IMG/VR virus record: IMGVR_UViG_3300037502_003770
Span: 186,001 to 250,000 of that record
DNA length: 64,000 nucleotides
Strand: one strand, 5' to 3'
Shown here: one piece after another, positions 3,189 through 23,206 of the stretch
How the letters are laid out: the number at the start of each line of letters is the position of its first letter
How positions within the stretch are numbered: position 1 is the stretch's first letter
Notes under the pieces: model-generated
The model's database searches: none
What the model was told of the DNA's origin: nothing
Seen by the model: only the letters and a program-made list of their open reading frames with translations
Translations under genes and position numbers: made by a program

Positions 3189-3189
3189 T

Positions 3190-3414: not shown

Positions 3415-3415
3415 A

Positions 3416-3610
3416 TTACATCCATAAAGATTTACGATTCCAAAGATTTTTAAATAATCGAACCAAAGATGAGTTGACAATATTTTCAAACTCATCTTTG
3501 GTTTTTTTAGTCCCTATTTGTTTAGAAACTTCATCTTCAATCATTTTTTTATATGTATCTTTTATTTCAGATTTAATTTTATCTAACTCTTTTTTTGATA
3601 ATTCTGCCAT
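3416..3610 (-). CDS. Hypothetical protein downstream of portal
   Basis: Start overlaps the portal stop (TAATG at 3608-3612); charged helical 64-aa product. Confidence 0.65.
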   Translation of the reverse strand: MAELSKKELDKIKSEIKDTYKKMIEDEVSKQIGTKKTKDEFENIVNSSLVRLFKNLWNRKSLWM

Positions 3611-6015: not shown

Positions 6016-6049
6016 AAATTTTTTATTATCAAATAATACTTATATTATA

Positions 6050-6056
6050 TAAATAG
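6050..6056 (-). promoter_or_regulatory. CTATTTA putative late promoter for portal
   Basis: TAAATAG on + strand, 34 nt upstream of the portal ATG; divergent copy at 6101-6107 serves ORF 6127. Confidence 0.6.
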
Positions 6057-6126
6057 TATTGTTAAAAATAACTATCTTTTTCTTAAATAGTAATTTCTTA
6101 CTATTTAGTAAAAACATTATTCTATA

Positions 6127-7398: not shown

Positions 7399-7426
7399 AT
7401 AAAACTATTTAAATTAAAAGAATTAT

Positions 7427-8329: not shown

Positions 8330-9093
8330 TGAATAAATTACAAGAAAAAAGTGATGCACATAAAATAGATTTAGAATTGTTAAATAACTTCTTACTTGAG
8401 AAAGGGGATAATATGTTAGAGATGTTATTAATACGAAAATATATAATTCCTTTAGATTTAAAAAAAATAAAAATATATCTATCAATAGATGGTTGGTTAT
8501 TACAAGATATACCAGAAAAACATAAGACATATGAATTATGCAAAATAGCAGTCACTAAAACAGGAAATGCTATTTTGCACGTTCCTGAAAATTTAATAGA
8601 TTATAATCTTTGTGAAATAGCGGTTTTACAAAATGGGCGTTCATTAGATTACGTGCCTTATAAATTTAAAGATTATAATCTTTGTGAGAAAGCTGTTTCT
8701 AATTATGGTCATGCTATACAATATGTACCAAAAGAATTAATTGACTATTTTCTTTGTGAGAAAGCGGTTTCTACTCATGGTCAATCTTTAATGTATATTC
8801 CTAAAAAATTTATTGATTATCCGCTTTGTGAGAAAGCGGTTTCTAATGATGGTTGGGCTTTTCAACATGTACCAGAAAAATTTATAGATTACTCTTTAGT
8901 GAAATCTACTTATCAATATAGTATAGAAGCAATAAAACAAAACTGGTTTCCAAAGGAATATATACCTCAGTTAATAAAAGACTTCCCTGAACATAGAGAA
9001 TTTTTAGAAAACAGTTTACTTCAAGAATATATTTCCAAAGAAGTAAGAAAATTATTAAAAGAAACACTATTTACTAAAAAGAAATTATTATAA
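8329..9093 (+). CDS. DUF4116-like repeat protein (paralog family)
   Basis: N-cap IDLELLNNFLLEKGD, five clear 24-aa repeats (e.g. IDYPLCEKAVSNDGWAFQHVPEKF), C-cap WFPKEYIPQLIKDFP...EYISKEVRKLLKE. Confidence 0.8.
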   Translation: MNKLQEKSDAHKIDLELLNNFLLEKGDNMLEMLLIRKYIIPLDLKKIKIYLSIDGWLLQDIPEKHKTYELCKIAVTKTGNAILHVPENLIDYNLCEIAVLQNGRSLDYVPYKFKDYNLCEKAVSNYGHAIQYVPKELIDYFLCEKAVSTHGQSLMYIPKKFIDYPLCEKAVSNDGWAFQHVPEKFIDYSLVKSTYQYSIEAIKQNWFPKEYIPQLIKDFPEHREFLENSLLQEYISKEVRKLLKETLFTKKKLL

Positions 9094-9887
9094 TGGACAA
9101 AAATAAACTAATAGAACTGGTACAACAAATATATGGTTATTCAAAAATCATTGGTGAATCATTAAAAAACATTGGCGATGATGTAAGTAATTTACCTATT
9201 GATTTGGAGAATGATTTAAATTCTATTGTTTATCAATTAAAAGATTATAAAGAACAAATAGTAAAAAATCTATATGGTAGTAAATTAAATGAACTAGCAA
9301 AAAAGAAAAAAACTACCACACCTGTAGAAAAAGGTCCAGATATTGTAACAAAAGATAGACAACAAAATAAAGAAAGAACTAAACCTGTTCCTTTAACAGA
9401 TGAACAACTTAAAAAATATAAAATAGAGCTACAAAAATTTATTAACCAAAATACAAACGATATTGCTTCTTTAAAAGATATTTTTGATGATATATTTCTT
9501 ATATATGAAAGATACTCTAGTACAGAAAGTGATAAAATAGAAAATAATATTGATTTAAAAATAAACTATGTTAATCAGTTATTAACTTTAACAAATAATG
9601 CTATTGATATAATAAAAAGTTTAAAAAGTAAAAATAATGTATGTTTTTATTTATTCATGTATGATATATTAACTGATTCTTCAAATGATGATTCAACCTT
9701 TAAATTTAATGAATTTCTTTTCGCAATAAAATCTTTCTATAATAATTTAATTGCTCAAGATTTTTTTGAAAATAATAGAAAAATATATTCTGAATATAAA
9801 ATAATAAACTATAACGATTTCTTAGTTGCTCTTGAAAATTCTATTAATAGATTTGCAAACTTTAATGATTTAGATAATCGTTTTTAA
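9093..9887 (+). CDS. Hypothetical protein
   Basis: 264-aa helical ORF; CTATTTA at 9067-9073 inside the upstream gene's 3' end. Confidence 0.7.
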   Translation: MDKNKLIELVQQIYGYSKIIGESLKNIGDDVSNLPIDLENDLNSIVYQLKDYKEQIVKNLYGSKLNELAKKKKTTTPVEKGPDIVTKDRQQNKERTKPVPLTDEQLKKYKIELQKFINQNTNDIASLKDIFDDIFLIYERYSSTESDKIENNIDLKINYVNQLLTLTNNAIDIIKSLKSKNNVCFYLFMYDILTDSSNDDSTFKFNEFLFAIKSFYNNLIAQDFFENNRKIYSEYKIINYNDFLVALENSINRFANFNDLDNRF

Positions 9888-9914
9888 CAACTTTTCATTA
9901 ATAGTATGATATTT

Positions 9915-11117
9915 CTATCTTTTTGGTGTTAAAACCAATGGATTTACTACAAAACCCTCTACCCCATTTGTAAATACATTTGGGATTGCCTTTCTTAATA
10001 TATTATAAGAACCGTTAACATCAGCGTTTATTAACTTTCCTTCTTTTCCTTTTATTTTATATAATCCTCTACTTTTTCTATAACCACTAAAAGAATATTC
10101 TTCTTTACAATTTGGTTTGTATGTTGGTATATAATCTAAATTTAAAAAAGAAGCTTTACTGGTATAACTTTCTTCTTGAAGGATTACATCTATACCTTCC
10201 ATTTTACATTTATATTTTAACATTTCAATAAATGTATTATGCGGTATAAATTGAAAATTTTGATTACTTACTTTACCCATACTTGTGTCTTGTTTCCAAT
10301 TACAATTTTTACCTATAATTAATAGATAAACATTATTATTAACTAAATGATTCACTAGTAATTTACTACTTTTATGTAAATAATCTTTTATTTTATTGTT
10401 TCTTTTATTTGTTAATTTAATAGATTTTTTAGTTGTTTTATTTCCTATTAATTTACTTTTAGATTTATTATAATATTGATTTATAGATTTTAATGGTTTA
10501 CCGTTTATTATTATTGGTTTATATTCTTTTTTATTATATGTTATTGTTGCTAAATTATTTATACCAAGGTCTATTGACGCTATTAAATCTGATTTTATAT
10601 TATTTTTTTCTTTTTTTTCATAAACAACTTCTATTACATAATATTTATTTTTCGGTATTATACGAACTTCTTTTATTAATTTCCAATCTTTGATTTTAGT
10701 TTTTATTTTAATTTCACTTTTTGATAGTTTTATTAAACCAGTTTTTTTAAATTCTCTATATTCTAAAGCTTGAATACAGTACTTTACCATAAATCTTCCA
10801 TTTTTTTTATTTAAATATTTAGGTATTTTATTTTTAACATCTTTATTTTTAAGTAATTTAAAAAAAGATTTAAAATTTTTGTCTAATATTTTTATAACTT
10901 TACATGAAACTTTTGCTGGTAAACTCTTATATTCGTCTGTATTTTTTAATAAATGATAGTTTTTAAGTTCATTTAAATATTTATTATTTTCAAAAAAATA
11001 TTGTCTTATATTATATAAACCTTGATTATATAAATTTTTAGATAAAAAACATAGATTATCACATGTATTATAGTATTTATTATTTTCTTTAATTACATGT
11101 TGTTCTACTAGTATCAT
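9915..11117 (-). CDS. tnpB: TnpB RNA-guided nuclease, rearranged-RuvC type
   Basis: RuvC-I SIDLGINN, RuvC-II position has IIGKN (Gly for Glu), alternative Glu in QEESYTS ~46 aa later, RuvC-III INADVNGSYNI; no CxxC zinc finger; no tnpA nearby. Confidence 0.9.
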   Translation of the reverse strand: MILVEQHVIKENNKYYNTCDNLCFLSKNLYNQGLYNIRQYFFENNKYLNELKNYHLLKNTDEYKSLPAKVSCKVIKILDKNFKSFFKLLKNKDVKNKIPKYLNKKNGRFMVKYCIQALEYREFKKTGLIKLSKSEIKIKTKIKDWKLIKEVRIIPKNKYYVIEVVYEKKEKNNIKSDLIASIDLGINNLATITYNKKEYKPIIINGKPLKSINQYYNKSKSKLIGNKTTKKSIKLTNKRNNKIKDYLHKSSKLLVNHLVNNNVYLLIIGKNCNWKQDTSMGKVSNQNFQFIPHNTFIEMLKYKCKMEGIDVILQEESYTSKASFLNLDYIPTYKPNCKEEYSFSGYRKSRGLYKIKGKEGKLINADVNGSYNILRKAIPNVFTNGVEGFVVNPLVLTPKR

Positions 11118-11126
11118 TTATTAATA

Positions 11127-11174
11127 TTTTTATATTATTAAATAGTGTATTATTACTATTTAATAATATAAAAA
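11127..11174. repeat. Perfect 20-bp inverted repeat with 8-nt loop containing two opposed CTATTTA motifs
   Basis: 11127-11146 pairs base-for-base with 11155-11174. Confidence 0.9.
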
Positions 11175-11201
11175 ATATACTAGGACTGTTTATGTACGGT
11201 T

Positions 11202-11230
11202 AAAACGATTTCTTTTTAAGGAATCGTTTT
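11202..11230. terminator. Hairpin, possible intrinsic terminator
   Basis: AAAACGATT ... AATCGTTTT stem followed by a T-rich run. Confidence 0.45.
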
Positions 11231-11266
11231 CTTTTTAAAAATTATCTATTTAAATAAAAGAATTAT

Positions 11267-12058
11267 ATGTTAAATAATTTACAAGAAAAAAGTGATTTAA
11301 AACAAATAGATTTAGAATCTTTAAATAATTTTTTGCTTGAGAAAGGGGATAGTTTTTGTGATACTTTACTTCAAATAAAATCATATAAAAAAATTGATTA
11401 TTCATCAGATAATATACAAAAATATTATTATACATTAAAATTTAAGGATGTTAATTCTTTTCCAAAACAATTATGGTATCATGATTCTTTTTGTGAAAAA
11501 ATGTTGGGTAGAGACAGCGGAAATATAAAACTTATACCTAAAACTTCAAATAATTATTATAATTTTTGTAAAATGGCTGTTACTCATAATCCATTTAATA
11601 TAAAACATATTGATTCAGAGTTTATTGATTATAATCTTTGTAAGATTGCAGTATCAAATATTTATACAACTTTAAATTTAATACCAAAAAAATTTATTGA
11701 TTATAATCTTTGTAAGATTGCAGTATCAAATAATTATAGTAATTTACAGTATGTACCTAAAAATATTGAAAATTACTACCTTATTTGTTTATTAGCTGTA
11801 TATAAAAAGGGTTCAGCTTTAGAATTTGTCCCCAAAAATATAGATAAATATTACACAATATTAAAATTAGCTTTTGAAACTTATAGATATATAATTATAC
11901 AAGATTGGTTCCCAAAAGAATATATACCTCGATTAATAAAAGACTTTCCTGAAGATAAAGAATTTCTTGAGCGATATATTCTTAAAGAATATATTTCCAA
12001 AGAAGTAAAGAAATTTTTAAAAGAATACCTATTTAAAGAAAAATTATATGTTAAATAA
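11267..12058 (+). CDS. DUF4116-like repeat protein (paralog family)
   Basis: N-cap IDLESLNNFLLEKGD, repeats IDYNLCKIAVSN, C-cap WFPKEYIPRLIKDFP...LKEYISKEVKKFLKE; CTATTTA at 11246-11252. Confidence 0.8.
   Translation: MLNNLQEKSDLKQIDLESLNNFLLEKGDSFCDTLLQIKSYKKIDYSSDNIQKYYYTLKFKDVNSFPKQLWYHDSFCEKMLGRDSGNIKLIPKTSNNYYNFCKMAVTHNPFNIKHIDSEFIDYNLCKIAVSNIYTTLNLIPKKFIDYNLCKIAVSNNYSNLQYVPKNIENYYLICLLAVYKKGSALEFVPKNIDKYYTILKLAFETYRYIIIQDWFPKEYIPRLIKDFPEDKEFLERYILKEYISKEVKKFLKEYLFKEKLYVK
11621..11732 (+). repeat. Exact 40-bp direct repeat, period 72 bp
   Basis: tttattgattataatctttgtaagattgcagtatcaaata at 11621-11660 and 11693-11732. Confidence 0.9.
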
Positions 12059-12659
12059 TTTTGACAAACTATCTAATAATAATCATAATATTGATTTAAT
12101 CTCTTTAAATAAATTCTTACTTGAAAAAGGTGATAATTTTTTAGAAAATCTTATTGATAATAATAAATTTATAAAAAAAGAAGATATAACAAAAGAGTTT
12201 TTTCAAAAGAAATATCGAACAATATTTGATGGTATATTTAGTGTTGATGATAGTTTTTCTTTCACAGGAGAAGATTTTCCTGTTGAGTATTATAATGAAA
12301 AAATAATAAAAAATCTTGTTGAAGAATATAATAAGTTTGGTAAATATTTATTATTTTTAAATTCAAAATTAGATATATATTTTCAATTAGCTAAATATAC
12401 TATTACAACTAAGGCTTCTTGGATGTTAATATACATACCTAAAACAATAGAAAATTATTATTCTTTAGTAAAACTTGCATTTGAAAAAGATAATAATATA
12501 ATTAGAGAAGAATGGTTCCCAAAAGAATACATTCCTAAATTAATAAATGATTACCCTCAAAATACTGATTTTTTAAAGAAATATTTACTTAAAGAATATA
12601 TTTCCAAAGAAGTAAGAAAATTTTTAAAAGAATACTATTTAAATAAAAATAAACAATAA
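12048..12659 (+). CDS. DUF4116-like family paralog with few repeats
   Basis: IDLISLNKFLLEKGD and WFPKEYIPKLINDYP...LKEYISKEVRKFLKE caps; N-half closely resembles ORF 2157; CTATTTA at 12029-12035. Confidence 0.8.
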   Translation: MLNNFDKLSNNNHNIDLISLNKFLLEKGDNFLENLIDNNKFIKKEDITKEFFQKKYRTIFDGIFSVDDSFSFTGEDFPVEYYNEKIIKNLVEEYNKFGKYLLFLNSKLDIYFQLAKYTITTKASWMLIYIPKTIENYYSLVKLAFEKDNNIIREEWFPKEYIPKLINDYPQNTDFLKKYLLKEYISKEVRKFLKEYYLNKNKQ

Positions 12660-12673
12660 CAAAATATAATAAT

Positions 12674-13777
12674 ATGAAAAAATTATTAACAGAAGCAACA
12701 TTCAAACGATTAATAAAGACTTTTATTAATGAAGATATTAGTAAAGTTAAAAATGGTAAATTACTAAACTGGATTAAAACATTTAATCAAAAAGCTAACA
12801 CTAATTATGATGAAAATGAATTAGCAAATATTGTAATTGAATTTTCAGAACTTCAAGGTAAGGGCGGTTTAAAAATAAATAATACACCTGTTGATATTTT
12901 ATCTGTTAGAACTGATGAACAATTAAAACAAGTTATTGATGCTCTTCAAGCTGTTAGAAAAAAACAAGAATTAAAAAATCAAATTAAAGGTATGTCTGGT
13001 CAAAGAAGAACTACTACCCTTAAATTTAATGGTAGTTTTAAAGGTTTACCTAGTAAAGAAAAATTTCAATTGTTAAAACAGTATTGTGAAAAACCTTCTG
13101 ATTTATTTCCTGATAAAAAATATGTACCAATTCCAACTAACGAATTTAAATATATTGAAGATGCTTTCCAAACAAATGCTGATAGAGGTGCTTTAACAGC
13201 TTATGCTGTTTGGTATGTATTAATTTGTTTTAAAGGTTATAAAAGAGCTGAAGATGCTTCTATTATTAAAAAATTTATTGATATTTATAATGAATATAAA
13301 GCTCAATATCCTTTAGAAATTACAAAGATAAATACAAAACAAGAATTTGATGAATTTTATAATATTTCAGCAAAAATAAATAGTGAAAAATCTTCTGGTA
13401 ATATTTCAACATCTGGTTATGTTACTGAAATGGTTTCAAAATATCCTCAATTTTATAAAGGAGATTTTAGTGACCAAAAATACGGTCAAACATATGTTTA
13501 TTTTCAATTACCAAAAATAACAAAAGACCAAGTACAAGAATATGTTCCAGTTTTTAGAGATTTAGGTATGTGGACAACTTGGTGTGTGTCTGCTGGCTGG
13601 GATGATGAAGGTAAAACCGCAAGTGCAGATAATGTTGAGCGTTACGCCACTCAAGATATATTCAGTATTTTAATAAATAAAGCCGACCCAAAAAATTCTG
13701 TTAATGGTAAATTTGCTCTTAATTCTGCTGATAAAGATTTAAGAAATATTTCAGACCAAGGTGTTTTTGGTGGTTAA
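12674..13777 (+). CDS. Hypothetical protein, possible head-packaged protein
   Basis: N-terminus MKKLLTEATFKRLIKTFINED with [LI]xE motifs; CTATTTA at 12635-12641. Confidence 0.7.
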   Translation: MKKLLTEATFKRLIKTFINEDISKVKNGKLLNWIKTFNQKANTNYDENELANIVIEFSELQGKGGLKINNTPVDILSVRTDEQLKQVIDALQAVRKKQELKNQIKGMSGQRRTTTLKFNGSFKGLPSKEKFQLLKQYCEKPSDLFPDKKYVPIPTNEFKYIEDAFQTNADRGALTAYAVWYVLICFKGYKRAEDASIIKKFIDIYNEYKAQYPLEITKINTKQEFDEFYNISAKINSEKSSGNISTSGYVTEMVSKYPQFYKGDFSDQKYGQTYVYFQLPKITKDQVQEYVPVFRDLGMWTTWCVSAGWDDEGKTASADNVERYATQDIFSILINKADPKNSVNGKFALNSADKDLRNISDQGVFGG

Positions 13778-15759: not shown

Positions 15760-17208
15760 ATGAGCAAAAGTAAAATTATTAAAGATTCTATTATTGAAAT
15801 AGAAAATATTAAAGAAGAAGCTAAATTATTAGCTAAAGAAGAAATTTTAAACGAAGTTCAAGAATCAATAGAACAACGTACTAAACAATTATTTGAAGAA
15901 AAATTGAAAGCACTAGAAGAAAGTGAAGAACTTGATGAAGAATTTACTACTAGTGAAATAAATATAAATGAAGAAGATTGTGGTTGCGATGATAAAGATG
16001 AAAAACCACTTGAAGAAAAAATAAATAAAGAAAAAACAGATTTAAAAAATAAAATGAAAAAAAATAAACTAAATTTGAAAGAAGAAGAAATTTCTTTAGA
16101 TGAAATGTTTCATGATGATATGAATGAAGGTGAAAATGATGATATTGATATCGAAGCATTGCACCAAAGTGGTGAAATAAGTGATGAAGCTTATAATTTA
16201 TGGAAACAAACTTACGGTGATAAAAACAACAATAATAATATGCAAGAAATTGACGAAACTTGGGATGAAAATAGTCTAATGGAATTTTTAAACGAATTAG
16301 ATATGGAAGATGAAACCGAAGAAATGCCTTCTGATGAAGAAGATATGGAGGGTGATGTTGAAAATATTGAAGGAGAAGAATTACCATCAGAAGATGAATT
16401 AGATAATGAAGAAATACCTTCTGATGAAGAAGATATGGAAATGGATGATGAAGAATTTGATTTTGATGATATTGAATTTGATATTGAAGACGATATGGAA
16501 GGTGAAGATTTCTCTGATGAAGATATGGAAATGGGTGATGAAGAATTTGATTTTGATGAAGAAGAAGATGAACTTGAAGATATGGATTCAGAAGATATGA
16601 ATTTTGATTCAGAAGAAGAAGATTTAGAAGATATGGATAATATCGAAGGTGAAGATGAATTTGAAGAAATAGATGATTTGGAAGAAGCTTTAGCTTATCC
16701 TCATCAATTACATAAAAATGTGGGTGGTAAGAGCTTTCCACAAAGAGACGGTGCACCAGAAAGACGTTCTAATATGAACGAAGATATTAAGAGACTTAAA
16801 AAGTTAGTGGAATCTGTTGTAAATGAAAATAAGACCTTGAAATCTAAGGTACAAAAAACTGAGGCTCTTGAAGCTTTATTACAAGAAACAAAAAATAAAT
16901 TGTATGATACAATGGTATTAGCACAAAAAACTGTTTATGCGAATAAAGTTTTATTTGAAAATACTCTTACTAATGATGAAAAAGCTGAAGTAATGAAAGC
17001 TTTTAGTAAGGCTGGCTCTAAAGATGAAATTGTTTCATTAAATGAAAGTTTTAATTCTAAATTTAATGGTACTAAAAGAACACTTAATACTAGCATAAGT
17101 AAAGTAATTTCTACAAGTAAAGGTGTTTTAAAAGAACATACTATTAGTGATGAAGATTCAAATACTAGTCGTATGAAAAACCTAATAAATTACAAACCAA
17201 AAAAATAA
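15760..17208 (+). CDS. Prohead scaffolding/core protein
   Basis: Between protease and capsid genes; coiled-coil ends, long D/E-rich centre with repeats PSDEEDME and DEEFDFD; CTATTTA at 15739-15745. Confidence 0.8.
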   Translation: MSKSKIIKDSIIEIENIKEEAKLLAKEEILNEVQESIEQRTKQLFEEKLKALEESEELDEEFTTSEININEEDCGCDDKDEKPLEEKINKEKTDLKNKMKKNKLNLKEEEISLDEMFHDDMNEGENDDIDIEALHQSGEISDEAYNLWKQTYGDKNNNNNMQEIDETWDENSLMEFLNELDMEDETEEMPSDEEDMEGDVENIEGEELPSEDELDNEEIPSDEEDMEMDDEEFDFDDIEFDIEDDMEGEDFSDEDMEMGDEEFDFDEEEDELEDMDSEDMNFDSEEEDLEDMDNIEGEDEFEEIDDLEEALAYPHQLHKNVGGKSFPQRDGAPERRSNMNEDIKRLKKLVESVVNENKTLKSKVQKTEALEALLQETKNKLYDTMVLAQKTVYANKVLFENTLTNDEKAEVMKAFSKAGSKDEIVSLNESFNSKFNGTKRTLNTSISKVISTSKGVLKEHTISDEDSNTSRMKNLINYKPKK

Positions 17209-17251
17209 ATTAAAATTTTAGTAAATTATTGGAAAATTAAAAAATAATTTA

Positions 17252-17258
17252 CTATTTA
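17252..17258 (+). promoter_or_regulatory. CTATTTA putative late promoter for major capsid protein
   Basis: 25 nt before ATG 17284. Confidence 0.65.
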
Positions 17259-17283
17259 AAATAAAAATTAATAAAATTAAAAT

Positions 17284-19053
17284 ATGGAAACATTATTAAA
17301 TTCAGGTCTGGTTGGTAACATTGGACTTAAAAATTTACAAGAAAACCGCAAACTAATCGTTGAGCGTTGGGAACAAACTGAAATGCTTGATGGTCTTTCA
17401 GGTTCAGCAAAAGAAAATATTGCACAGTTATTTGAAAACCAAGCAAGTTATATGTTGAACGAATCAACTGTATCTGATAGTTCTGGTTCTTTTGAGACAG
17501 TTGCTTTCCCTATTGTTCGTAGGGTATTCCAAAAATTACTTGCAAATGAAATTGTATCAATTCAAGCTATGTCAGCCCCAATTGGTAGATTGTATTTCTT
17601 TAATCCAAAAGTTTCTGTTAGAAATGTTAATGGTAATATTCAAAGTCATACTTCTATGGATGGTGGTTATTCAAATGCTGCTACTAATTATATTGTTGAT
17701 GCTGCTACTGGTAGAAAAACGCTTGTTGCTGGTACTGATAACTTTAACAAAACTGGTGGTACTCAATATAGTTCAACTTCACTTTACGATTCATTCTATT
17801 CTACTGAATATAACGATGAAGGTACTGCTTTATTTGATTTAACAAGAGGTAAAATTTTTGTTCAAAACATTGTAGCCGTTCCAAGAAATAGTGTATTTAC
17901 TAATGGTGTAACAGAAAAATATCAAGTTAAATTAACTGGTTTTAGTTCAACTAGAGATGGTAGATTAGTAGGTCCTGTTGGTACTGTTGCTGATACAGAA
18001 GAATTCTTATCAAGCTTAAAAGTTACTTGTAATCAAAACTTATTTAATGGTCCAAGTTCAATTGCTTTCGCAAGTGGTACTACTTTGGATTTTAGAACTT
18101 TGGCTCAAGCTTACGGTAAGCCACTTGTTAAAAATGGTACTATTGAATTAGAAATTGATGTAACTGGTCCGTCTTTGACTTCAGGTTTATTTATTCCTTT
18201 GACCGCAGCTACAGGTACAACCGCAGCTTCAGGTGGTGGTACTCCAGTATTTAGTGCTTCATATTCAGTTTATTCTGATTTAGAAGAAGATAGCGAAATG
18301 GCAGAAGTAACTTTTGATTTAGATTTCGTAACTGTTGATGTAACTTCTCGTAAATTGAGAACTTCATTTACTCCTGAAATTCAGCAAGATGCAGCTGCTT
18401 TCCACAACATTGATGTTGAAGCTGAATTGACTGCAATGCTTTCTGAAACTATTTCAGCTGAAATTGATAGGGAAATTTTACGTGATTTGCGTAAAGGTGC
18501 AGCTTGGTCTACTTCATGGGATTATGCAGGTTATAGAAAATTAGTTGCAGCTGGTAGTGCAGTTGGTATTACTCAAAAAGATTATAATCAAGAATTAATT
18601 ACTAAAGTAAATGAACTTTCTTCTTTGATTATGAAAACAACTCTTAGAGGTGGTGCTAATTTCGTAGTAGTTTCTCCTGAAATCGCTGCTGTATTAAATA
18701 ACTTAGAATATTTCCACGTAACTGATGCTTCTCCAGAAGAAACTAAGTTCTCTATGGGTATCGAGAAAATTGGTTCAATTCAAGGTCGTTATACTGTTTA
18801 TGTAGATATGTATGCTCCAGCAGGTAAAATGTTGGTGGGACATAAGGGTGAAGGCATCTTCCACGCCGGGTTCGTATATGCGCCGTTTGTGCCATTATTA
18901 CTTTTCCCTGGTGTTACTAACCCTAACAACTTCTCAAAAGTATTAGGAATTATGACTAGATACGCTAAGAAAATGGTAAATAACCGTTTCTACGGTGTAG
19001 TAAACGTAAAAGGTTTAAATTATACACCAGTTTCAGAATTCTTAGGTGCTTAA
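17284..19053 (+). CDS. Major capsid protein (T4 gp23-like) with large insertion domain
   Basis: AFPIVRRVF, IVSIQAMSAPIG, RKLRTSFTPEIQQD, EIDREILRDL, GANFVVVSPE, GFVYAP.VP, GIMTRYA; probable maturation site MLNE|S. Confidence 0.96.
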   Translation: METLLNSGLVGNIGLKNLQENRKLIVERWEQTEMLDGLSGSAKENIAQLFENQASYMLNESTVSDSSGSFETVAFPIVRRVFQKLLANEIVSIQAMSAPIGRLYFFNPKVSVRNVNGNIQSHTSMDGGYSNAATNYIVDAATGRKTLVAGTDNFNKTGGTQYSSTSLYDSFYSTEYNDEGTALFDLTRGKIFVQNIVAVPRNSVFTNGVTEKYQVKLTGFSSTRDGRLVGPVGTVADTEEFLSSLKVTCNQNLFNGPSSIAFASGTTLDFRTLAQAYGKPLVKNGTIELEIDVTGPSLTSGLFIPLTAATGTTAASGGGTPVFSASYSVYSDLEEDSEMAEVTFDLDFVTVDVTSRKLRTSFTPEIQQDAAAFHNIDVEAELTAMLSETISAEIDREILRDLRKGAAWSTSWDYAGYRKLVAAGSAVGITQKDYNQELITKVNELSSLIMKTTLRGGANFVVVSPEIAAVLNNLEYFHVTDASPEETKFSMGIEKIGSIQGRYTVYVDMYAPAGKMLVGHKGEGIFHAGFVYAPFVPLLLFPGVTNPNNFSKVLGIMTRYAKKMVNNRFYGVVNVKGLNYTPVSEFLGA

Positions 19054-19078
19054 TCTATTAAAATAGGTTATTAAAACA

Positions 19079-19104
19079 AAAGGGTACTTTTTTAAGTACC
19101 CTTT
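19079..19104. terminator. Bidirectional terminator between convergent capsid and nuclease genes
   Basis: AAAGGGTACTT-TTTT-AAGTACCCTTT stem-loop. Confidence 0.75.
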
Positions 19105-20615
19105 GTTCTTTTATAGATAAGTGTTTCAAATTTTTCTTTATTTTTTTCAAAATCGTTTTTAAAAGTAAAAATTTGTTTACTATAAGTTTTATTTAAAAAT
19201 TTACATTGATTATTTACTTTACTATATGTAAATTTTGTTAATTTAGAAGCTTCAGTCATAGACCTATATTCTGCAATAATTTCTTTTGTCTCTAAATCAT
19301 ATAAATAAACAGGCATACTTTCACCGCTTAATAATTTACTTTCTTTTATTTTATTAATAGTTTCTTCATCTCTTTTTTTACCTTCCCAAAATTTAGGTGA
19401 ATTTTCTGATAACCATTTCTTTTGTTCTTCTGTTTTTGGTCTACCTAAAACTTTAGCTGCTTCACCACGTTTTACTCTTTTATCAACATGTTCTTTAGTT
19501 TGTTTTCTACCTAAACCAGCTTTAGACATCTTTTGTCTTGTTTCTTCTGAAATAATTTTATTTCTACCACCTAAATCAATATTATAACCTATGTTTCTAT
19601 CAGTAGAATTATATTCTTTTATATAAAAGATTTCTTTTTCATTTAGTTCATTAATATCATGAGTTTCGTAAATAACGTCAAATTTAAAGTTATCAAATCC
19701 ATATTTAATAATTGCATTTTTTAAATGCTCATTACATTTTAATCTTTTATAACATGTTATTCTATGTCTTAATAAACGATAAGTTTGTCCAATATAAATT
19801 TTACCATTAATTAAATTTGTTATTTTATAAATAAGACCAGGATTTCTTAAATTAAACCTTTCTATAATATCTTCTTTTTTAGGATAAGGTTTAATCATAT
19901 GTTTAATTTTCTCATAAAAATTTTTATTTTCATATTTATTACCTATAAAATAAAAATATCTACTTTTACGAAGTTGTGTATTAAATTTAGCGTTAGGGTA
20001 AACTTTCAATACATTTTCAACTGAACTAGAACCAATCTTTTTTCTTATAGTTTTTTCTGAATAAGCTTTCCCATCTATTATAATTTTCATTCTTTTTTTC
20101 TCATTACCATACTTGTCATAATTCCCTTCCATAAGACCTACATAATACCAATTGCATGATTGATAGATTATACCTATTTCACCAGCAAGAGCGTCTGTTG
20201 TGGCTGTAATGACCTTATAATCGGTGTTTTTCTTTAACAATTTACAAACTTTTGAAATAAAGAAAGATGCTGTATTAATAGGTGTCCAATGAAGACAAAC
20301 TCCTCTTGAAAGGAGGATTATTTTTTCAAAGAAATCATATTTTTTCCAATGGTCTTTATTTGCGGAATACTCATGAGAAAAAACAAGCACACCTCCAAGG
20401 TATTCAATATTATCAATATTAAAAAATATACCAAAATAGTATATATTATAAGGTGCTAAAGCTTTAAGGTATTCATATTCTTTAACAATATTTTCAGCTT
20501 CTAAACGAGTTATTTCTTTAATAACCGTATTTTTCAAAGAAGCTTTATTTTTATCAAAAGGAAGTATTTCTTCTAATTCTTTTTCTTTTCTAATTAGATA
20601 CTGATGGCAATCCAT
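19092..20615 (-). CDS. Fusion: Mom-like (GNAT-fold) DNA modification domain + GIY-YIG endonuclease with NUMOD3/IENR1-like DNA-binding tail
   Basis: aa 1-245: LSRGVCLHWTPINTASFFIS, TDALAGEIGIIYQSCNWYYVG, KSRYFYFIG...KPYPK (Mom-like); from aa 260: LIYKITNLINGKIYIGQT, LNEKEIFYI, GYN; ISEETRQKMSKA; PVYLYDL...YRSMTEAS. Confidence 0.85.
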   Translation of the reverse strand: MDCHQYLIRKEKELEEILPFDKNKASLKNTVIKEITRLEAENIVKEYEYLKALAPYNIYYFGIFFNIDNIEYLGGVLVFSHEYSANKDHWKKYDFFEKIILLSRGVCLHWTPINTASFFISKVCKLLKKNTDYKVITATTDALAGEIGIIYQSCNWYYVGLMEGNYDKYGNEKKRMKIIIDGKAYSEKTIRKKIGSSSVENVLKVYPNAKFNTQLRKSRYFYFIGNKYENKNFYEKIKHMIKPYPKKEDIIERFNLRNPGLIYKITNLINGKIYIGQTYRLLRHRITCYKRLKCNEHLKNAIIKYGFDNFKFDVIYETHDINELNEKEIFYIKEYNSTDRNIGYNIDLGGRNKIISEETRQKMSKAGLGRKQTKEHVDKRVKRGEAAKVLGRPKTEEQKKWLSENSPKFWEGKKRDEETINKIKESKLLSGESMPVYLYDLETKEIIAEYRSMTEASKLTKFTYSKVNNQCKFLNKTYSKQIFTFKNDFEKNKEKFETLIYKRTKGT

Positions 20616-20679
20616 ATATTTTTATTACAATTTATTTTATATTTAAACGGATTTATACTATTAAAACTGTCTTTTTTTG

Positions 20680-21414
20680 TTAAATTTTATTTGTATATTT
20701 AAGAATTTTTTCTATTAGGTCTTTTCTATATTGTATAGGATATACTTTTACATTACCATCATTTAATAAATGAAAAATACTTAATTTATCAATAGATACT
20801 TTTTCATTAAGTTCGGTCATATAAGCATAGATACTTAATTGCAGGGTATAAATACTTATTTCACAAGAAGGAAGTATTTCTAAGGGAGAAAGCATTGTTT
20901 GATTATAGTTATTATCTATTCTTAATTGTTTATTAGTTTTCCAATCTAGGATAGATACTTTATTATTCTTTTTATATACTTTAATATCGGCAGTACCAGC
21001 TAAACCAATATCTTTATTATGAATTTTTGATTCAGCTAGTACAAGTTCGCATCTTTCTTTAAGTTTTAAATTTTCTAAAAAATCAATATACTTTTGCATA
21101 ATATCTTTTTCAATAAAAGGATTTTCTTCAAAGGAATAAGAATCTTTTATAAGATATTCTTCTAATGTATTATGAATTAAAGTACCTTTATCTGTTGATT
21201 TTTTATTTTCTATTTTCCATTGATTTAATATTTCTTCTTTAGAAAGGTTAGTATATTTAGGGTTAGTTTTAGAATAAGCACATTTAGTTGACCAATAATC
21301 TTCATCAAAAGGTGTTTCAAATTGGTGAATAAAATTAGTTACTCTTTCATAGAGATTTCCTTCTTTATCTTGATACTTATTTAGTGTTTCATTTAAGAAT
21401 AGTTCGTTATTCAT
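20680..21414 (-). CDS. PD-(D/E)XK family exonuclease
   Basis: KGTLIH, AES, LAGTADI, ILDWKT, LQLSIY motifs in canonical order. Confidence 0.88.
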   Translation of the reverse strand: MNNELFLNETLNKYQDKEGNLYERVTNFIHQFETPFDEDYWSTKCAYSKTNPKYTNLSKEEILNQWKIENKKSTDKGTLIHNTLEEYLIKDSYSFEENPFIEKDIMQKYIDFLENLKLKERCELVLAESKIHNKDIGLAGTADIKVYKKNNKVSILDWKTNKQLRIDNNYNQTMLSPLEILPSCEISIYTLQLSIYAYMTELNEKVSIDKLSIFHLLNDGNVKVYPIQYRKDLIEKILKYTNKI

Positions 21415-21436
21415 TTAAGATAGATATTTATAAAAG

Positions 21437-21470
21437 AAAAACCATCTTTTTATTAGGAAAGATGGTTTTT
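21437..21470. terminator. Intrinsic terminator downstream of endolysin
   Basis: AAAAACCATCTTT ... AAAGATGGTTTTT stem. Confidence 0.7.
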
Positions 21471-21489
21471 TTAAAGAAGTTAATTTTAA

Positions 21490-22038
21490 TTAAAGTTTAA
21501 CATAAGTTGTACCAGAGATAAATTCTCTTTTATTTCTTTTTTCATTTAATTGAGATACTGTATGACCAAATGTTTTTTCAAAGTGTGGCGCATCTTTAAA
21601 TGATTTCCAATCTCCGCCCCATATCCAGTTATATTTTTTAAATACTTCAACAACTTCCATCCAATCAGGTTTTTTATCATTATCAAAATCTTTTCTCATA
21701 TCCCAAGATACTTCTTTATTATCAATTAATAAACAGAAATCTAAAGCAAGACCAAAGTTATGAATTGATTGCCATTCTCTAGCTCTTGTAACAACTTTAT
21801 TTTGAGCTGCGGTAATTGGTCCCATATTAGCAGCTTTTCTTAAAGAATTAACAGTTGTTAAATTTTGTCTTCCTTGAGCAAATAAGGCTCTTTGCTCAGC
21901 TTCGGTTCTTAGAGTATAAGTAAATCTTACTTCAGCTCTACCTGTTAATTTAGTACATATTTCTTTATATATTGTTTCAACTTCTTGTCTAACAGAAGGG
22001 TGAAGGGTTTGTATTCTTTGTAGAGTTATACTGTCCAT
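21490..22038 (-). CDS. Endolysin, M15 family L-Ala-D-Glu peptidase
   Basis: RTEAEQRALFAQGR, SIHNFGLALDF, WGGDW, DAPHFE; CTATTTA at 22057-22063 (minus). Confidence 0.92.
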   Translation of the reverse strand: MDSITLQRIQTLHPSVRQEVETIYKEICTKLTGRAEVRFTYTLRTEAEQRALFAQGRQNLTTVNSLRKAANMGPITAAQNKVVTRAREWQSIHNFGLALDFCLLIDNKEVSWDMRKDFDNDKKPDWMEVVEVFKKYNWIWGGDWKSFKDAPHFEKTFGHTVSQLNEKRNKREFISGTTYVKL

Positions 22039-22343
22039 AATAAAAATCTTTTATTATAAATAGTATTTATTACTAATTCAATTAATAATCTTATTTTAAA
22101 TTTAGATGTTTTTGGTATATCTCTGTAAGATACAGGTATTTTCTTATTTTTTATGATATAAAGTGTTAAATAATAATAAAACTTATAATTATAATATTTT
22201 TTATTTTGTATAAAGAAATAATATTCTGATGGTAGTAGACATTTTTTATTAGTATAAATATCTTTTAATTTTATATTAAAATATAAATAACATCTTTTAT
22301 TCTCAAGATAAATAAAGTTATCATTAAATAGAATTATATACAT
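22026..22343 (-). CDS. Small paralog-array protein
   Basis: N-terminus MYIILFNDNFIYLE shared with four neighbours. Confidence 0.65.
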   Translation of the reverse strand: MYIILFNDNFIYLENKRCYLYFNIKLKDIYTNKKCLLPSEYYFFIQNKKYYNYKFYYYLTLYIIKNKKIPVSYRDIPKTSKFKIRLLIELVINTIYNKRFLLWTV

Positions 22344-22364
22344 AAGTTTAATTAATATATTAAA

Positions 22365-22781
22365 TTACCAACGCTTACATAATTTATATTCTTCTATAAT
22401 TCTTTGTTTTAAATCAGAAGGTACAAAATTAATAAGGTCCTCATGAAATGGATAGTTGTCAAAATTAATTTTACAAATTTCATAATCTATGAAAGAATCG
22501 GGAACAAAATCAATACAAAAAATAGAATTTTTTACTAGTGTTTTATAAAAAATACGATTAATTTTAGTAGTATTAAATTGTAACATTGAAAAACTTATTG
22601 CTGAAATAATATAGTTATCTGATTTTGATAATGTTGTAAGCGTATTAAAATACATTGAAATAAAGTTTTTACAAACATTTATATTATCTATAATTTTTGT
22701 TCCGACTGGAAGGTTGAGTCTATCAAAATCAAAATATGTTTCCACATAAAAGAAATTATCATTAAATATATTTATTCTCAT
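22365..22781 (-). CDS. Small paralog-array protein
   Basis: MRINIFNDNFFYVE; C-terminal FVPDSFIDYEICK resembles a DUF4116-like repeat. Confidence 0.65.
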   Translation of the reverse strand: MRINIFNDNFFYVETYFDFDRLNLPVGTKIIDNINVCKNFISMYFNTLTTLSKSDNYIISAISFSMLQFNTTKINRIFYKTLVKNSIFCIDFVPDSFIDYEICKINFDNYPFHEDLINFVPSDLKQRIIEEYKLCKRW

Positions 22782-22993
22782 AAAATTAGATTTTGGTTAA
22801 AATAATATTGATATTTAATACGTGAAAGTTCTTTAAAACTATAAATACTAACAAGTCTTAATTTACTTTTTAAATCAAAGTTACAATAAAAACAAAAATC
22901 ATTAATTTTTAATTCTGTTGATAATGTAGCACCATATGAAGTTAACCATTCATTATAATAACGATTATTTTTAATTTGTATTGTTATTTTCAT
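22778..22993 (-). CDS. Hypothetical small protein
   Basis: Tightly packed in same-strand array; MKITI start. Confidence 0.5.
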   Translation of the reverse strand: MKITIQIKNNRYYNEWLTSYGATLSTELKINDFCFYCNFDLKSKLRLVSIYSFKELSRIKYQYYFNQNLIL

Positions 22994-22999
22994 TATTTG

Positions 23000-23206
23000 T
23001 TAAATAGGTTTATAATATTCATTAACAATAAAAATTTTATTAAAATAAGAATAAATATGTTCACAAATACCTGATTTATCATTAAAACTGGATAATGTAA
23101 TTGCAACAATATTCATTAAAAGTAAATTTGAAACCATACTTTTAGATGTTATATAATAATTCTCTCTATAACGAGAATTTACGTATAATTTAATATATAT
23201 TTCCAT
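23000..23206 (-). CDS. Hypothetical small protein
   Basis: MEIYI start shared with 23219-23410. Confidence 0.5.
   Translation of the reverse strand: MEIYIKLYVNSRYRENYYITSKSMVSNLLLMNIVAITLSSFNDKSGICEHIYSYFNKIFIVNEYYKPI

What the first reader, a model, noticed from the sequence alone, without database searches (positions are those of the whole stretch)
19092..20615. Mom-like DNA-modifying enzyme fused to a GIY-YIG homing-type endonuclease
Seen: one uninterrupted 507-aa frame. aa 1-245 carry Mom-like motifs through the family-typical end RYFYFIG...PYPK; aa 260 onward carry GIY-YIG (IYKITN...KIYIGQT...E...N) with NUMOD3- and IENR1-like DNA-binding segments. Known: Mu Mom is a GNAT-fold enzyme that hypermodifies adenine and blocks restriction; GIY-YIG/NUMOD proteins are phage homing endonucleases. 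Inference: a single-chain modify-and-cut unit. It could protect its own DNA while cutting unmodified competitor or host DNA (a phage-borne restriction-modification analogue), or be a selfish nuclease that spreads by carrying an anti-restriction benefit. I do not recall this fusion being characterised; novelty needs a database check.
Basis: partly seen in the sequence, partly recalled or inferred. Interest (0 to 1): 0.82.

Follow-up and report, generated by a model that had tools for sequence, protein, structure and literature searches.

The report
Mom–GIY-YIG nuclease fusion beside capsid gene
A jumbo phage encodes one protein that joins a Mom-type DNA-marking enzyme to a complete I-TevI-type homing nuclease; the fusion is real and conserved in over 100 uncultured phages, sits in a fast-changing slot after the capsid gene, and is a new variant of a modifier-plus-nuclease pairing predicted in 2021 but never tested.

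Summary
Window 19092-20615 (minus strand) is one 507-aa ORF. It holds a full-length Mom domain (aa 1-246, ending at Mu Mom's own C-terminal PYPK), a short linker, a GIY-YIG domain (aa 260-350), NUMOD3-like repeats and a NUMOD1 helix-turn-helix.

- **Structure:** AlphaFold/Foldseek gives Mu Mom (8bv8) and the I-TevI catalytic domain as best matches.
- **Family:** More than 100 metagenomic clusters share the fusion. All GIY-YIG catalytic residues and four Mom catalytic residues are kept, but Mom R151 and H58 are not. dN/dS is 0.14-0.18 for the two catalytic domains.
- **Location:** In 13 of 13 loci the gene lies just after the terminator of the T4-type capsid gene, in either orientation and sometimes in tandem.
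- **Turnover:** A sister phage lacks it cleanly. Elsewhere the same nuclease chassis carries a second Mom-like GNAT domain ("X"). X is also the C-terminal domain of Hef-like, Vsr-type homing endonucleases.

My best reading is a homing-type cassette whose Mom domain protects the carrier's DNA. No activity has been shown. Iyer et al. 2021 already described Mom-REase fusions in jumbo phages with the same modify-and-cut logic, so this is a new variant, not a new kind.

The parts
19092..20615 (-). Whole fusion ORF: 507 aa plus stop codon
   Evidence: ORF list and sequence. Domain scans. Structure model with mean pLDDT 85.4.
19878..20615 (-). Mom-family GNAT domain, aa 1-246, ending in PYPK
   Evidence: Pfam PF25680 at E 5e-23. 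Foldseek top hit is Mu Mom 8bv8, E 2e-9, target TM 0.70. Mu R111, S124, D149 and Y159 align with R104, S117, D141 and Y151, which are kept in at least 118 of 121 fused sequences; R151 aligns with L143 and H58 with E48, so these are not kept. dN/dS 0.14 against L001.
19839..19877 (-). Inter-domain linker, aa 247-259; only 2-4 aa long in most relatives
   Evidence: Gap-rich columns in the family alignment. Low pLDDT block at about aa 250-260. In L002 and L004 the Mom HMM match ends 2-4 aa before the GIY-YIG match starts.
19566..19838 (-). GIY-YIG catalytic domain, aa 260-350
   Evidence: Pfam PF01541. Profile hit to I-TevI 1ln0/1mk0 at E 8e-9. Foldseek target TM 0.78-0.80, rmsd about 2 A. Y263, Y274, E328 and N345 are invariant and R280 is at least 90% conserved across 82 fusions. 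dN/dS 0.18.
19317..19565 (-). NUMOD3-like repeat linker, aa 351-433
   Evidence: Weak NUMOD3 hit at aa 352-366. NUMOD3 is among the precomputed Pfam families of many relatives. pLDDT is 50-70 here, so the region is probably flexible.
19095..19316 (-). NUMOD1 helix-turn-helix DNA-binding module (aa 434-467) and C-terminal tail (aa 468-507)
   Evidence: Pfam NUMOD1 at E 7e-6. Model pLDDT 84-93. This is the least conserved part of the family at 50% mean identity. dN/dS is 0.47 over aa 351-507.
19079..19104 (.). Bidirectional intrinsic terminator shared with the convergent capsid gene; it overlaps the last codons and stop codon of the fusion
   Evidence: Terminator-like on both strands. RNA fold -16.1 kcal/mol, z -4.7. 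An equivalent hairpin follows the MCP stop in all carrier loci and in the empty locus L041.
17284..19053 (+). T4-type (Gp23) major capsid gene. Its 3' end marks the slot where the fusion family always sits, and it is the candidate target region
   Evidence: phrog_138 at E 2e-66. Gp23 Pfam assignments in relatives. Adjacency in 13 of 13 loci.
20680..21414 (-). PD-(D/E)XK exonuclease gene directly upstream on the same strand, probably co-transcribed with the fusion in this lineage
   Evidence: phrog_298. Pfam PDDEXK_1. In L001 its stop lies 3 nt from the fusion start. A terminator-like hairpin at 21437-21470 lies upstream of it.

Best explanation
The ORF is a genuine single-chain fusion. It joins a Mom-family GNAT domain, of the kind that hypermodifies adenine in DNA, to a complete I-TevI-type GIY-YIG endonuclease with catalytic domain, NUMOD3-like linker and NUMOD1 helix-turn-helix.

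It belongs to a large family known only from metagenomes. The family behaves like a free-standing homing-endonuclease cassette. It occupies the slot just after the terminator of the T4-type major capsid gene in one clade of jumbo phages.

Proposed mechanism:
1. The C-terminal DNA-binding module docks the protein at a specific site, most likely in or near the conserved 3' part of the capsid gene.
2. The GIY-YIG domain cuts that site in related co-infecting genomes that lack the cassette or the mark. Recombinational repair then copies the cassette in, which is homing or marker exclusion.
3. The Mom domain modifies adenines in the carrier's own DNA, at the nuclease's target and possibly genome-wide. 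The carrier is therefore not cut and may also gain anti-restriction protection.

Shown here: domain identities and folds, conserved catalytic residues, purifying selection, conservation of the fusion, fixed location, presence/absence between sisters, and module exchange.

Inferred: both enzymatic activities, the target site, and that the modification blocks cleavage.
For: - **Domains and folds:**
- **Catalytic residues:** the GIY-YIG set is invariant or nearly so in 82 fusions. Mom R104, S117, D141 and Y151 are kept in at least 118 of 121 sequences.
- **Selection:** dN/dS is 0.14 (Mom), 0.18 (GIY-YIG) and 0.47 (DNA-binding part).
- **Family:** the 120 best hits are almost all Mom+GIY-YIG, at 43-91% identity and about 93% coverage. 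The three parts co-vary, Spearman about 0.74.
- **Homing-cassette behaviour:**
  - 13 of 13 loci lie at the capsid gene's 3' end, right after its terminator. The gene is co-directional in most and convergent in the window/L001 and independently in L284.
  - Tandem copies or mixed arrays occur in L004, L201, L283 and L134.
  - There is a clean 1.9-kb versus 0.24-kb indel, with no remnant, between the sister phages L121 and L041, whose MCPs are 88% identical.
  - Phages with 80-91% identical MCPs carry slot genes that are only 50-75% identical or of a different architecture.
- **Functional coupling:**
  - The same GIY+DBD chassis carries either Mom or a second GNAT domain, X. X-fused forms are nested at 3 or more places among Mom-fused forms.
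  - 16 of the 23 closest chassis representatives carry one of the two domains.
  - X's best PDB match is also Mu Mom, and GNAT Pfam models hit X.
  - X is the C-terminal domain of Hef-like proteins with zinc fingers and a Vsr-like nuclease. Those proteins sit in the same slot (L283) and occur at 927 places in 385 isolate phage records.
- **Literature:** Hef-type proteins belong to the Vsr-like EDxHD homing endonuclease family, and U5 Hef cleaves nrdB (PMC3239194, PMC2988022).
Against: - No activity, target site or DNA modification has been observed.
- Mu Mom R151 is essential in Mu, and H58 and W48 are important there, but none is conserved in this subfamily.
- On the capsid tree all carriers fall in one well-supported group. 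Vertical inheritance of a lineage-specific gene therefore explains much of the fixed location.
- There is only one filled/empty sister pair.
- 7 of the 23 closest chassis relatives have no GNAT domain, so the nuclease does not need one.
- Ordinary free-standing homing endonucleases achieve self-immunity through target-sequence differences, so a protective modification is not required.
- The profile-profile test did not link X to Mom by sequence.
Confidence: 0.45

Rival explanations
1. It is a general restriction-modification analogue, as Iyer et al. 2021 proposed for Mom-REase fusions. Mom modifies the phage genome globally. The fused nuclease degrades unmodified host DNA or any superinfecting phage DNA at many sites. 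There is no homing and no specific target near the capsid gene.
For: A published prediction exists for the sister architecture (PMC7824862). Both catalytic centres are conserved. Across the deepest split the fusion is about as conserved as the capsid protein, at 51-52% against 53-55% identity, which suits a useful phage gene. From memory, T4 EndoII is a GIY-YIG enzyme that attacks unmodified host DNA.
Against: - The nuclease part is a complete I-TevI-type enzyme with a long-site DNA-binding module.
- It has a fixed intergenic slot, occurs in both orientations and in tandem arrays, is cleanly absent from a sister phage, and turns over quickly. These are hallmarks of homing cassettes.
- The DNA-binding part diversifies, and a ~575-aa length class matches the DNA-binding profile only in part. 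That suggests changing specific targets.
- No PADLOC model matches.
Confidence: 0.2
2. The Mom-type domain is not a DNA modifier here. It has been recruited as an accessory module of the homing endonuclease, for example for DNA binding or base flipping, dimerisation or regulation. The same would apply to domain X in Hef-like enzymes.
For: - R151, which is essential in Mu, and H58 are not conserved.
- In the four X-GIY proteins the position that appears to match Mom S124 is N rather than S. This is by eye and has not been verified structurally.
- Mu Mom binds dsDNA and forms dimers.
- Hef-type proteins are treated in the literature simply as homing endonucleases.
Against: R104, S117, D141 and Y151 are equivalents of residues whose mutation abolishes or strongly reduces Mu Mom activity. 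They are kept in at least 118 of 121 fusions and in all stand-alone relatives examined. The Mom half is under the strongest purifying selection, dN/dS 0.14. Stand-alone Mom genes at 40-49% identity exist in related phages.
Confidence: 0.12
3. It is a historical accident without functional coupling. A free-standing GIY-YIG homing gene landed just downstream of a phage mom gene, the stop codon was lost, and the fused gene has since been inherited as a unit. Mom acts as an ordinary anti-restriction enzyme and the nuclease as an ordinary selfish element.
For: Stand-alone Mom and stand-alone chassis relatives both exist. The Mom domain ends at its natural C-terminus, followed by a complete nuclease. 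Carriers form one capsid clade.
Against: - One accident does not explain exchange of Mom for another Mom-like GNAT domain at 3 or more positions on the same chassis.
- It does not explain why Mom-type GNAT domains are also fused to Vsr-like nucleases, both in the same slot and across hundreds of phages.
- It does not explain the published Mom-REase fusions.
- The linker is only 2-4 aa in most members.
- All parts co-vary.
Confidence: 0.1
4. The fusion is an assembly or frameshift artefact, or a hidden intron or intein separates two genes.
For: None found. Raw reads could not be inspected; only contigs were available.
Against: Independent assemblies span the junction without indels. More than 100 clusters from many samples and sources share the architecture. 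No Rfam family matches in 17000-23000, even at E up to 1. The Mom profile is complete before the junction and the GIY-YIG domain starts right after it.
Confidence: 0.01

Closest known systems
Phage Mu Mom (PDB 8bv8; PF25680), the tRNA-Gly-dependent adenine N6 hypermodifying GNAT
   Same: It is the best structural match (E 2e-9), and the Pfam score is well above cutoff. Equivalents of R111, S124, D149 and Y159 are present. There is an insertion in the region of Mu's HTH-like insert, and the C-terminal PYPK is identical.
   Different: Sequence identity is about 20%. R151, H58, W48 and W181 are not conserved. No com-like regulator was seen. The domain is fused to a nuclease, whereas Mu Mom is a 241-aa stand-alone protein. 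The co-substrate and product are unknown here.
I-TevI and the T4 Seg free-standing GIY-YIG homing endonucleases
   Same: - The catalytic domain superposes at about 2 A.
- The Y, Y, R, E, N set is kept.
- The layout is catalytic domain, then NUMOD linker, then helix-turn-helix.
- TIGR01453 scores above cutoff.
- The gene is free-standing and intergenic next to a conserved essential gene, with presence/absence between relatives.
   Different: It carries a 246-aa Mom domain at its N-terminus. It is not inside an intron. The I-TevI zinc finger is from memory and was not tested here. The target and any homing are untested.
Jumbo-phage Mom-REase fusions predicted by Iyer, Anantharaman, Krishnan, Burroughs and Aravind 2021 (PMC7824862)
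   Same: A Mom-family GNAT domain is fused to an endonuclease domain in T4-related jumbo phages. The proposed logic of protecting self and attacking others is the same. The zinc-finger/Vsr-like/X proteins found here in the same slot probably correspond to that class.
   Different: The nuclease here is GIY-YIG, not REase/PD-(D/E)XK fold, and GIY-YIG is not mentioned in that paper. The Mom domain here is canonical PF25680 and N-terminal. The homing-cassette behaviour and the capsid-gene slot were not found in the passages I searched.
Hef-type (EDxHD, Vsr-like) homing endonucleases: U5 Hef, Hef-like genes of Campylobacter phages, AR9/PBS1
   Same: Their C-terminal domain X replaces Mom on the same GIY-YIG chassis, and X's best PDB match is Mu Mom. 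They occupy the same capsid-adjacent slot in L283. They are an accepted homing endonuclease family.
   Different: The nuclease fold is different, the domain order is reversed (nuclease first, GNAT last), and DNA binding is by zinc fingers. I could not read the original Hef paper, so whether U5 Hef itself carries X was not verified.
Type IIC/IIG single-chain restriction-modification enzymes such as MmeI and BcgI (from memory)
   Same: One polypeptide combines a DNA-modifying domain, a nuclease domain and a specificity module. Modified DNA is protected and unmodified DNA is cut.
   Different: Those enzymes use SAM-dependent methyltransferase and PD-(D/E)XK domains and are cellular defence genes. 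This protein has a GNAT and a GIY-YIG domain on a phage, and no methyltransferase domain is present.

Membership tests
Mom family (PF25680) | Sequence match to the family profile above the curated threshold, over the full length | tested here: met
   82.2 bits against a cutoff of 27.1, covering profile positions 3-202 of 202. phrog_1384 at E 4e-25.
Mom family (PF25680) | GNAT fold with Mu Mom as the nearest solved structure | tested here: met
   Foldseek against PDB: 8bv8 ranks 1-2, E 2e-9, target TM 0.66-0.70. Generic GNATs follow at E 1e-3 or weaker. The model's pLDDT is about 90 in this half.
Mom family (PF25680) | Catalytic residues R111, S124, D149 and Y159 (Mu numbering) | tested here: met
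   They align with R104, S117, D141 and Y151, and are conserved in 118-121 of 121 fused sequences. Their roles are taken from PMC13219725.
Mom family (PF25680) | R151 (essential in Mu) and H58 | tested here: not met
   R151 aligns with L143, a variable position (A, M or S) in the family. H58 aligns with a conserved E48. The same holds for the stand-alone phage Moms in the fetched loci.
Mom family (PF25680) | HTH-like insertion (Mu residues 175-209) required for activity | tested here: inconclusive
   The aligned region is present, is 11 aa longer, and contains helices at 187-194 and 199-205 in the model. No residue-level superposition was done, and W181 is not conserved.
Mom family (PF25680) | Post-replicative N6-adenine hypermodification of dsDNA using Gly-tRNA-Gly | not testable with these tools
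   This needs LC-MS or SMRT sequencing of DNA exposed to the enzyme.
GIY-YIG homing endonucleases (I-TevI type) | GIY-YIG catalytic domain with the conserved Y, Y, R, E, N residues | tested here: met
   PF01541 scores 27.2 against 22.6. TIGR01453 scores 89.9 against 56. Y263, Y274, E328 and N345 are invariant and R280 is at least 90% conserved. Target TM 0.78-0.80 to 1mk0/1ln0.
GIY-YIG homing endonucleases (I-TevI type) | C-terminal modular DNA-binding region (NUMOD repeats and helix-turn-helix) | tested here: met
   NUMOD1 scores 26.7 against 22.8. NUMOD3 is sub-threshold in this protein but is among the precomputed Pfam families of many relatives.
GIY-YIG homing endonucleases (I-TevI type) | Selfish-element genomic signature: intron-borne, or free-standing between conserved genes with presence/absence among close relatives | tested here: met
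   The gene is free-standing after the capsid terminator in 13 of 13 loci. There is a clean indel between L121 and L041. The slot turns over. It is not intron-borne. Caveat: there is only one empty-site pair, and carriers form one clade.
GIY-YIG homing endonucleases (I-TevI type) | Site-specific cleavage of a cassette-free allele, and gene conversion (homing) | not testable with these tools
   This needs cleavage mapping and phage crosses.
Jumbo-phage Mom-REase fusions (Iyer et al. 2021) | Mom-family GNAT domain fused to an endonuclease in a jumbo phage | tested here: met
   The window is part of a 312,694-bp IMG/VR contig. The domains are as given above.
Jumbo-phage Mom-REase fusions (Iyer et al. 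2021) | Nuclease partner of the REase (PD-(D/E)XK) fold | tested here: not met
   The partner here is GIY-YIG. The REase/Vsr-like partner occurs in the related zinc-finger/Vsr/X proteins.
Type IIC/IIG single-chain R-M enzymes | SAM-dependent DNA methyltransferase domain in the same chain as the nuclease | tested here: not met
   No methyltransferase family was detected. No PADLOC model matches.

The most novel reading that the evidence does not exclude
Mom-type GNAT domains may be a general, previously unrecognised self-immunity module of phage homing endonucleases. The fused enzyme would hypermodify an adenine inside its own recognition or cleavage site, so the carrier genome cannot be cut although it keeps the intact target sequence. 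This would explain why Mom or its cousin X recurs on GIY-YIG and Vsr-like nucleases (PHROGs label some X carriers HNH, a domain I did not confirm), and why several such cassettes stack in one slot beside the capsid gene. It would also mean that the many 'Hef-like homing endonucleases' of Campylobacter, AR9/PBS1 and T4-like phages write site-specific DNA hypermodifications.
Probability: 0.25. Interest if true: 0.8.

Novelty: new variant of a known kind. Interest (0 to 1): 0.6.

Why it matters
If the two halves work together, this is a compact, single-chain system that writes a bulky adenine mark and cuts DNA lacking it. It would be built from two small, well-understood folds that had not been reported together.

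It would give a simple experimental handle on three questions:
- How free-standing homing endonucleases avoid cutting their own genome.
- Whether Mom-type chemistry can be aimed at specific sites by a fused DNA-binding module.
- What the widespread, unexplained C-terminal domain of Hef-like homing endonucleases does in many cultured phages.

It also shows that the region just after the capsid gene of a clade of uncultured jumbo phages is a hotspot where such cassettes compete. That bears on phage-phage exclusion and on mosaic evolution of head genes.

If the halves are independent, the finding is an ordinary anti-restriction gene hitch-hiking on an ordinary selfish nuclease.

Tried and rejected
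- **Hidden intron or RNA element at the junction:** Rfam at E up to 1 over 17000-23000 found nothing.
- **Close relatives among cultured phages:** there was no DNA match, and no record covered both halves by tblastn.
- **X as a sequence-detectable Mom relative:** hhalign of X profiles (4 and 46 sequences) against the fusion profile was negative. Profile search of PDB with X found nothing. The X HMM against Mu Mom gave only 1.1 bits, although the catalytic motifs lined up. The link rests on Foldseek ranking and GNAT Pfam hits.
- **Defence-system membership:** no PADLOC hits.
- **Promoters:** sigma-70-like sites were no more frequent than in shuffles, so no promoter is claimed.
- **tRNA-Gly or any tRNA near the gene:** none in the window.
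- **Further Mom, X or GIY-YIG genes in the window:** none.
- **The original Hef paper (PMC1275590):** not held, so Hef's own domain content and self-protection data could not be checked.
- **Scattered carriers on the capsid tree:** I considered and rejected this as evidence of mobility. They form one group, so the mobility argument rests on within-clade turnover instead.
- **Raw reads:** none were available; only Logan contigs could be laid on the stretch.
Full report
**1. The observation**

Window 19092-20615 holds one uninterrupted ORF of 507 codons on the minus strand, with an ATG start.

Domain hits:
- Pfam places a complete Mom domain (PF25680, profile positions 3-202 of 202, E 5e-23) at aa 31-246.
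- A GIY-YIG domain lies at aa 260-338.
- A sub-threshold NUMOD3 motif lies at aa 352-366.
- NUMOD1 lies at aa 434-467.
- NCBIfam's 'group I intron endonuclease' model TIGR01453 covers aa 262-472.
- PHROGs gives 'Mom-like DNA modification protein' plus 'homing endonuclease'.

An alignment that includes Mu Mom, fetched as L281, shows that Mu Mom's natural C-terminus (PYPK) aligns with window aa 243-246. The Mom domain is therefore complete before a 13-aa linker and the first GIY-YIG strand.

**2. Is the fusion real?**

- Rfam finds no intron or other RNA family in 17000-23000, even at E up to 1.
- The probable source run contains a 15.5-kb contig identical to 18900-20800.
- An independent run from another study contains a single contig crossing the junction, with substitutions but no indels. 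These are assembled contigs, not raw reads.
- A search of 5.8 billion proteins returned 297 significant hits among the scored candidates. The best 120 all carry Mom and almost all carry GIY-YIG, with lengths mostly 480-510 aa, 43-91% identity and about 93% coverage.

This is a conserved protein family, not an accident of one assembly.

**3. Fold and catalytic residues**

An AlphaFold2 model built on 82 family members has mean pLDDT 85.4.

Foldseek against PDB:
- The Mu Mom crystal structure 8bv8 ranks first (E 2e-9, target TM 0.70).
- The I-TevI catalytic domain follows (1mk0/1ln0, target TM 0.78-0.80, rmsd about 2 A).

Across 82 fusions, GIY-YIG residues Y263, Y274, E328 and N345 are invariant, and R280 is at least 90% conserved.

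The 2026 mechanism paper (PMC13219725) shows that Mu Mom transfers glycine from Gly-tRNA-Gly to adenine N6. It reports that R111, S124 and R151 are essential, that D149A greatly reduces activity, and that Y159, H58, Y59, W48 and W181 are important.

In the window protein:
- R111, S124, D149 and Y159 correspond to R104, S117, D141 and Y151. These are kept in at least 118 of 121 fused sequences.
- R151 aligns with a variable position (L143).
- H58 aligns with a conserved glutamate.
- The two tryptophans are not kept.

The Mom domain is probably active, but its chemistry may differ from Mu's.

**4. Selection and co-evolution**

Against the closest relative with DNA (L001; 87% protein identity), dN/dS is 0.14 for Mom, 0.18 for GIY-YIG and 0.47 for the DNA-binding part.

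Across 94 full-length members, pairwise identities of the three parts co-vary to the same degree (Spearman 0.73-0.75), with a few recombinant outliers.

In most members the linker is only 2-4 residues.

**5. Genomic setting**

The window is part of a 312,694-bp IMG/VR contig, i.e. a jumbo phage, and has 23% GC.

The local gene order is:
- prohead protease
- an acidic scaffold-like protein
- the T4-type major capsid gene on the plus strand
- the fusion, a PD-(D/E)XK exonuclease and an M15 endolysin, all convergent on the minus strand

The capsid gene and the fusion share a bidirectional terminator at 19079-19104.

In all 13 fusion-bearing loci with enough flank, the fusion lies immediately at the 3' end of the capsid gene, just beyond its terminator:
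- It is co-directional in L002, L003, L004, L121-L124, L201, L282 and L283.
- It is convergent in the window (also fetched as locus L005), in L001, and independently in L284.

L004 carries two different Mom-GIY genes in tandem.

**6. Presence, absence and turnover**

Eighty IMG/VR loci chosen only by capsid similarity (44-51% identity) have no Mom gene within 8 kb.

On a capsid tree:
- The carriers form one well-supported group.
- The 80 others form a separate clade.

The slot is therefore a feature of one phage lineage, not something scattered by frequent long-range transfer.

Inside that lineage the content changes quickly:
- L041 is sister to the carrier L121 (capsid 88% identical, flanks syntenic) but has 240 nt of unrelated sequence in place of L121's 1.9-kb cassette. 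The break begins about 50 nt after the capsid stop, and there is no remnant.
- Phages with 80-91% identical capsid proteins carry slot genes that are only 50-75% identical or of another architecture.

**7. A second N-terminal domain on the same chassis**

In L132, L133, L134 and the first gene of L201, a roughly 505-aa protein sits in the same slot. Its GIY-YIG+DBD half is 40-51% identical to the window's. Its N-terminal 260 aa ('X') do not match Mom by HMM or by hhalign.

What X is:
- Acetyltransf_1/7/10 models hit X in several homologues, and one hit is above threshold.
- A confident model (pLDDT 91.6) has Mu Mom as its best PDB match (E 5e-6), closely followed by generic GNATs.
- A weak profile alignment puts Mom's R111, D149, R151 and Y159 in register with X's conserved motifs.

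On a tree of the C-terminal halves, X-fused proteins are nested at three or more well-supported places among Mom-fused ones.

An exhaustive search with the C-half alone found only 22 representatives at E 1e-30 or better. Among the 23 closest, 11 carry X, 5 carry Mom and 7 carry neither.

**8. X elsewhere**

X occurs at 43-65% identity in more than 200 clusters. It is mostly the C-terminal domain of 540-590-aa proteins with BED, C2H2 or Ros/MucR zinc fingers and a Vsr-like REase_MTES_1575 nuclease domain.

One such protein lies between the capsid gene and a Mom-GIY gene in L283.

In cultured phages X is found at 927 places in 385 records. These are annotated as Hef-like or HNH homing endonucleases, with 10-11 copies in Campylobacter phages and copies in Bacillus phages AR9 and PBS1.

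Hef-type proteins belong to the Vsr-like EDxHD homing endonuclease family (PMC3239194), and U5 Hef cleaves nrdB (PMC2988022).

**9. Prior art**

Iyer et al. [quoted passage not shown] They predict these to be the restriction component, with momylation protecting phage DNA while the nuclease attacks host or superinfecting DNA. GIY-YIG is not mentioned in that paper.

The 2026 Mom paper mentions no fusions. My literature searches found no description of Mom+GIY-YIG. The finding is a new variant of a known, predicted but untested kind.

**10. Interpretation**

The nuclease half has every computational hallmark of a free-standing homing endonuclease. The genomic behaviour of the gene fits that.

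Mom-type GNAT domains are also paired repeatedly with two unrelated nuclease folds. They are exchanged on one chassis, and their catalytic residues are conserved. A mere hitch-hiking accident does not explain this well.

The reading that accounts for both sets of facts is a homing or exclusion nuclease whose fused Mom-type domain marks the carrier's DNA so that it is not cut. A genome-wide anti-restriction benefit is possible as well. I give this 0.45.

Rivals:
- a general restriction-like weapon (0.2)
- a non-catalytic accessory role for the GNAT domain (0.12)
- an uncoupled historical fusion (0.1)
- an artefact (0.01)

Nothing here measures modification, cleavage or their interdependence. 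The decisive experiments are simple and are listed separately.

Noticed in passing
L121:2797-4704 (+) and L134:14085-16022 (-): The prohead protease gene of two related phages is about 635-646 aa instead of about 230 aa. The two protease halves are separated by an in-frame insert of about 380 aa. The insert gives an Intein_splicing hit (E 2e-6) that is below the Pfam cutoff. It is probably an intein, and so another selfish element in the head-gene module.
   Followed up: partly
L134:9203-10636 (-): A 478-aa protein with two tandem GIY-YIG domains followed by the family's DNA-binding region sits directly next to the capsid gene, beside an X-GIY gene.
   Followed up: partly
L283:6001-7659 (+): A Hef-like protein with zinc fingers and domain X (P0174) lies between the capsid gene and a Mom-GIY gene. 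In this member only the Ros/MucR zinc finger is on record; the Vsr-like domain was seen in its homologues. Different nuclease/GNAT cassettes therefore stack in one slot. Several other jumbo contigs hold both protein types, judging by shared contig lengths.
   Followed up: partly
window 19339-19451: In the independent run X2, the contig matching this gene has a 113-nt block of the same length but too diverged to align. The block lies inside the NUMOD3-like linker coding region and is flanked by well-matching sequence. This looks like a local mosaic or recombination patch in the DNA-binding part.
   Followed up: no
L132:7206-7990, L133:7200-7990, L134:7212-7995, L201:5452-6230: In the four X-GIY proteins, the position that appears to correspond to Mom's catalytic S124 reads N (GIFNKLL). 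In Hef-like X domains the consensus reads S (GIASKLL). This was judged by eye from the alignments and has not been verified by structural superposition. It could mean that the X domain of the X-GIY proteins is inactive.
   Followed up: no
window 15760-17208 (+): A 482-aa, extremely acidic (D/E-rich, repetitive) protein lies between the prohead protease and the capsid gene. It has no PHROG or Pfam match. Its position suggests a scaffold protein.
   Followed up: no
window 22026-23206 (-): A run of small ORFs (68-138 aa) rich in N, Y, K and I lies downstream of the endolysin. One of them (22365-22781) has no PHROG match; the others were not searched.
   Followed up: no
window 20300-20317: A short GC-rich inverted repeat inside the Mom coding region scores as terminator-like on both strands. 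It may be chance or an internal attenuator.
   Followed up: no
L038 (316-kb IMG/VR contig), 2165-13300: Four separate GIY-YIG ORFs lie within about 11 kb of another jumbo-phage contig. This shows how densely such nuclease genes populate these genomes.
   Followed up: no
L203-L206, L218, L224, L251 (Acidobacteria and Bryobacterales MAG contigs): Mom-domain ORFs in these bacterial MAGs are unusually long (427-753 codons stop-to-stop), with the Mom domain at either end and extra unidentified regions. These may be further Mom fusion architectures in cellular genomes.
   Followed up: no
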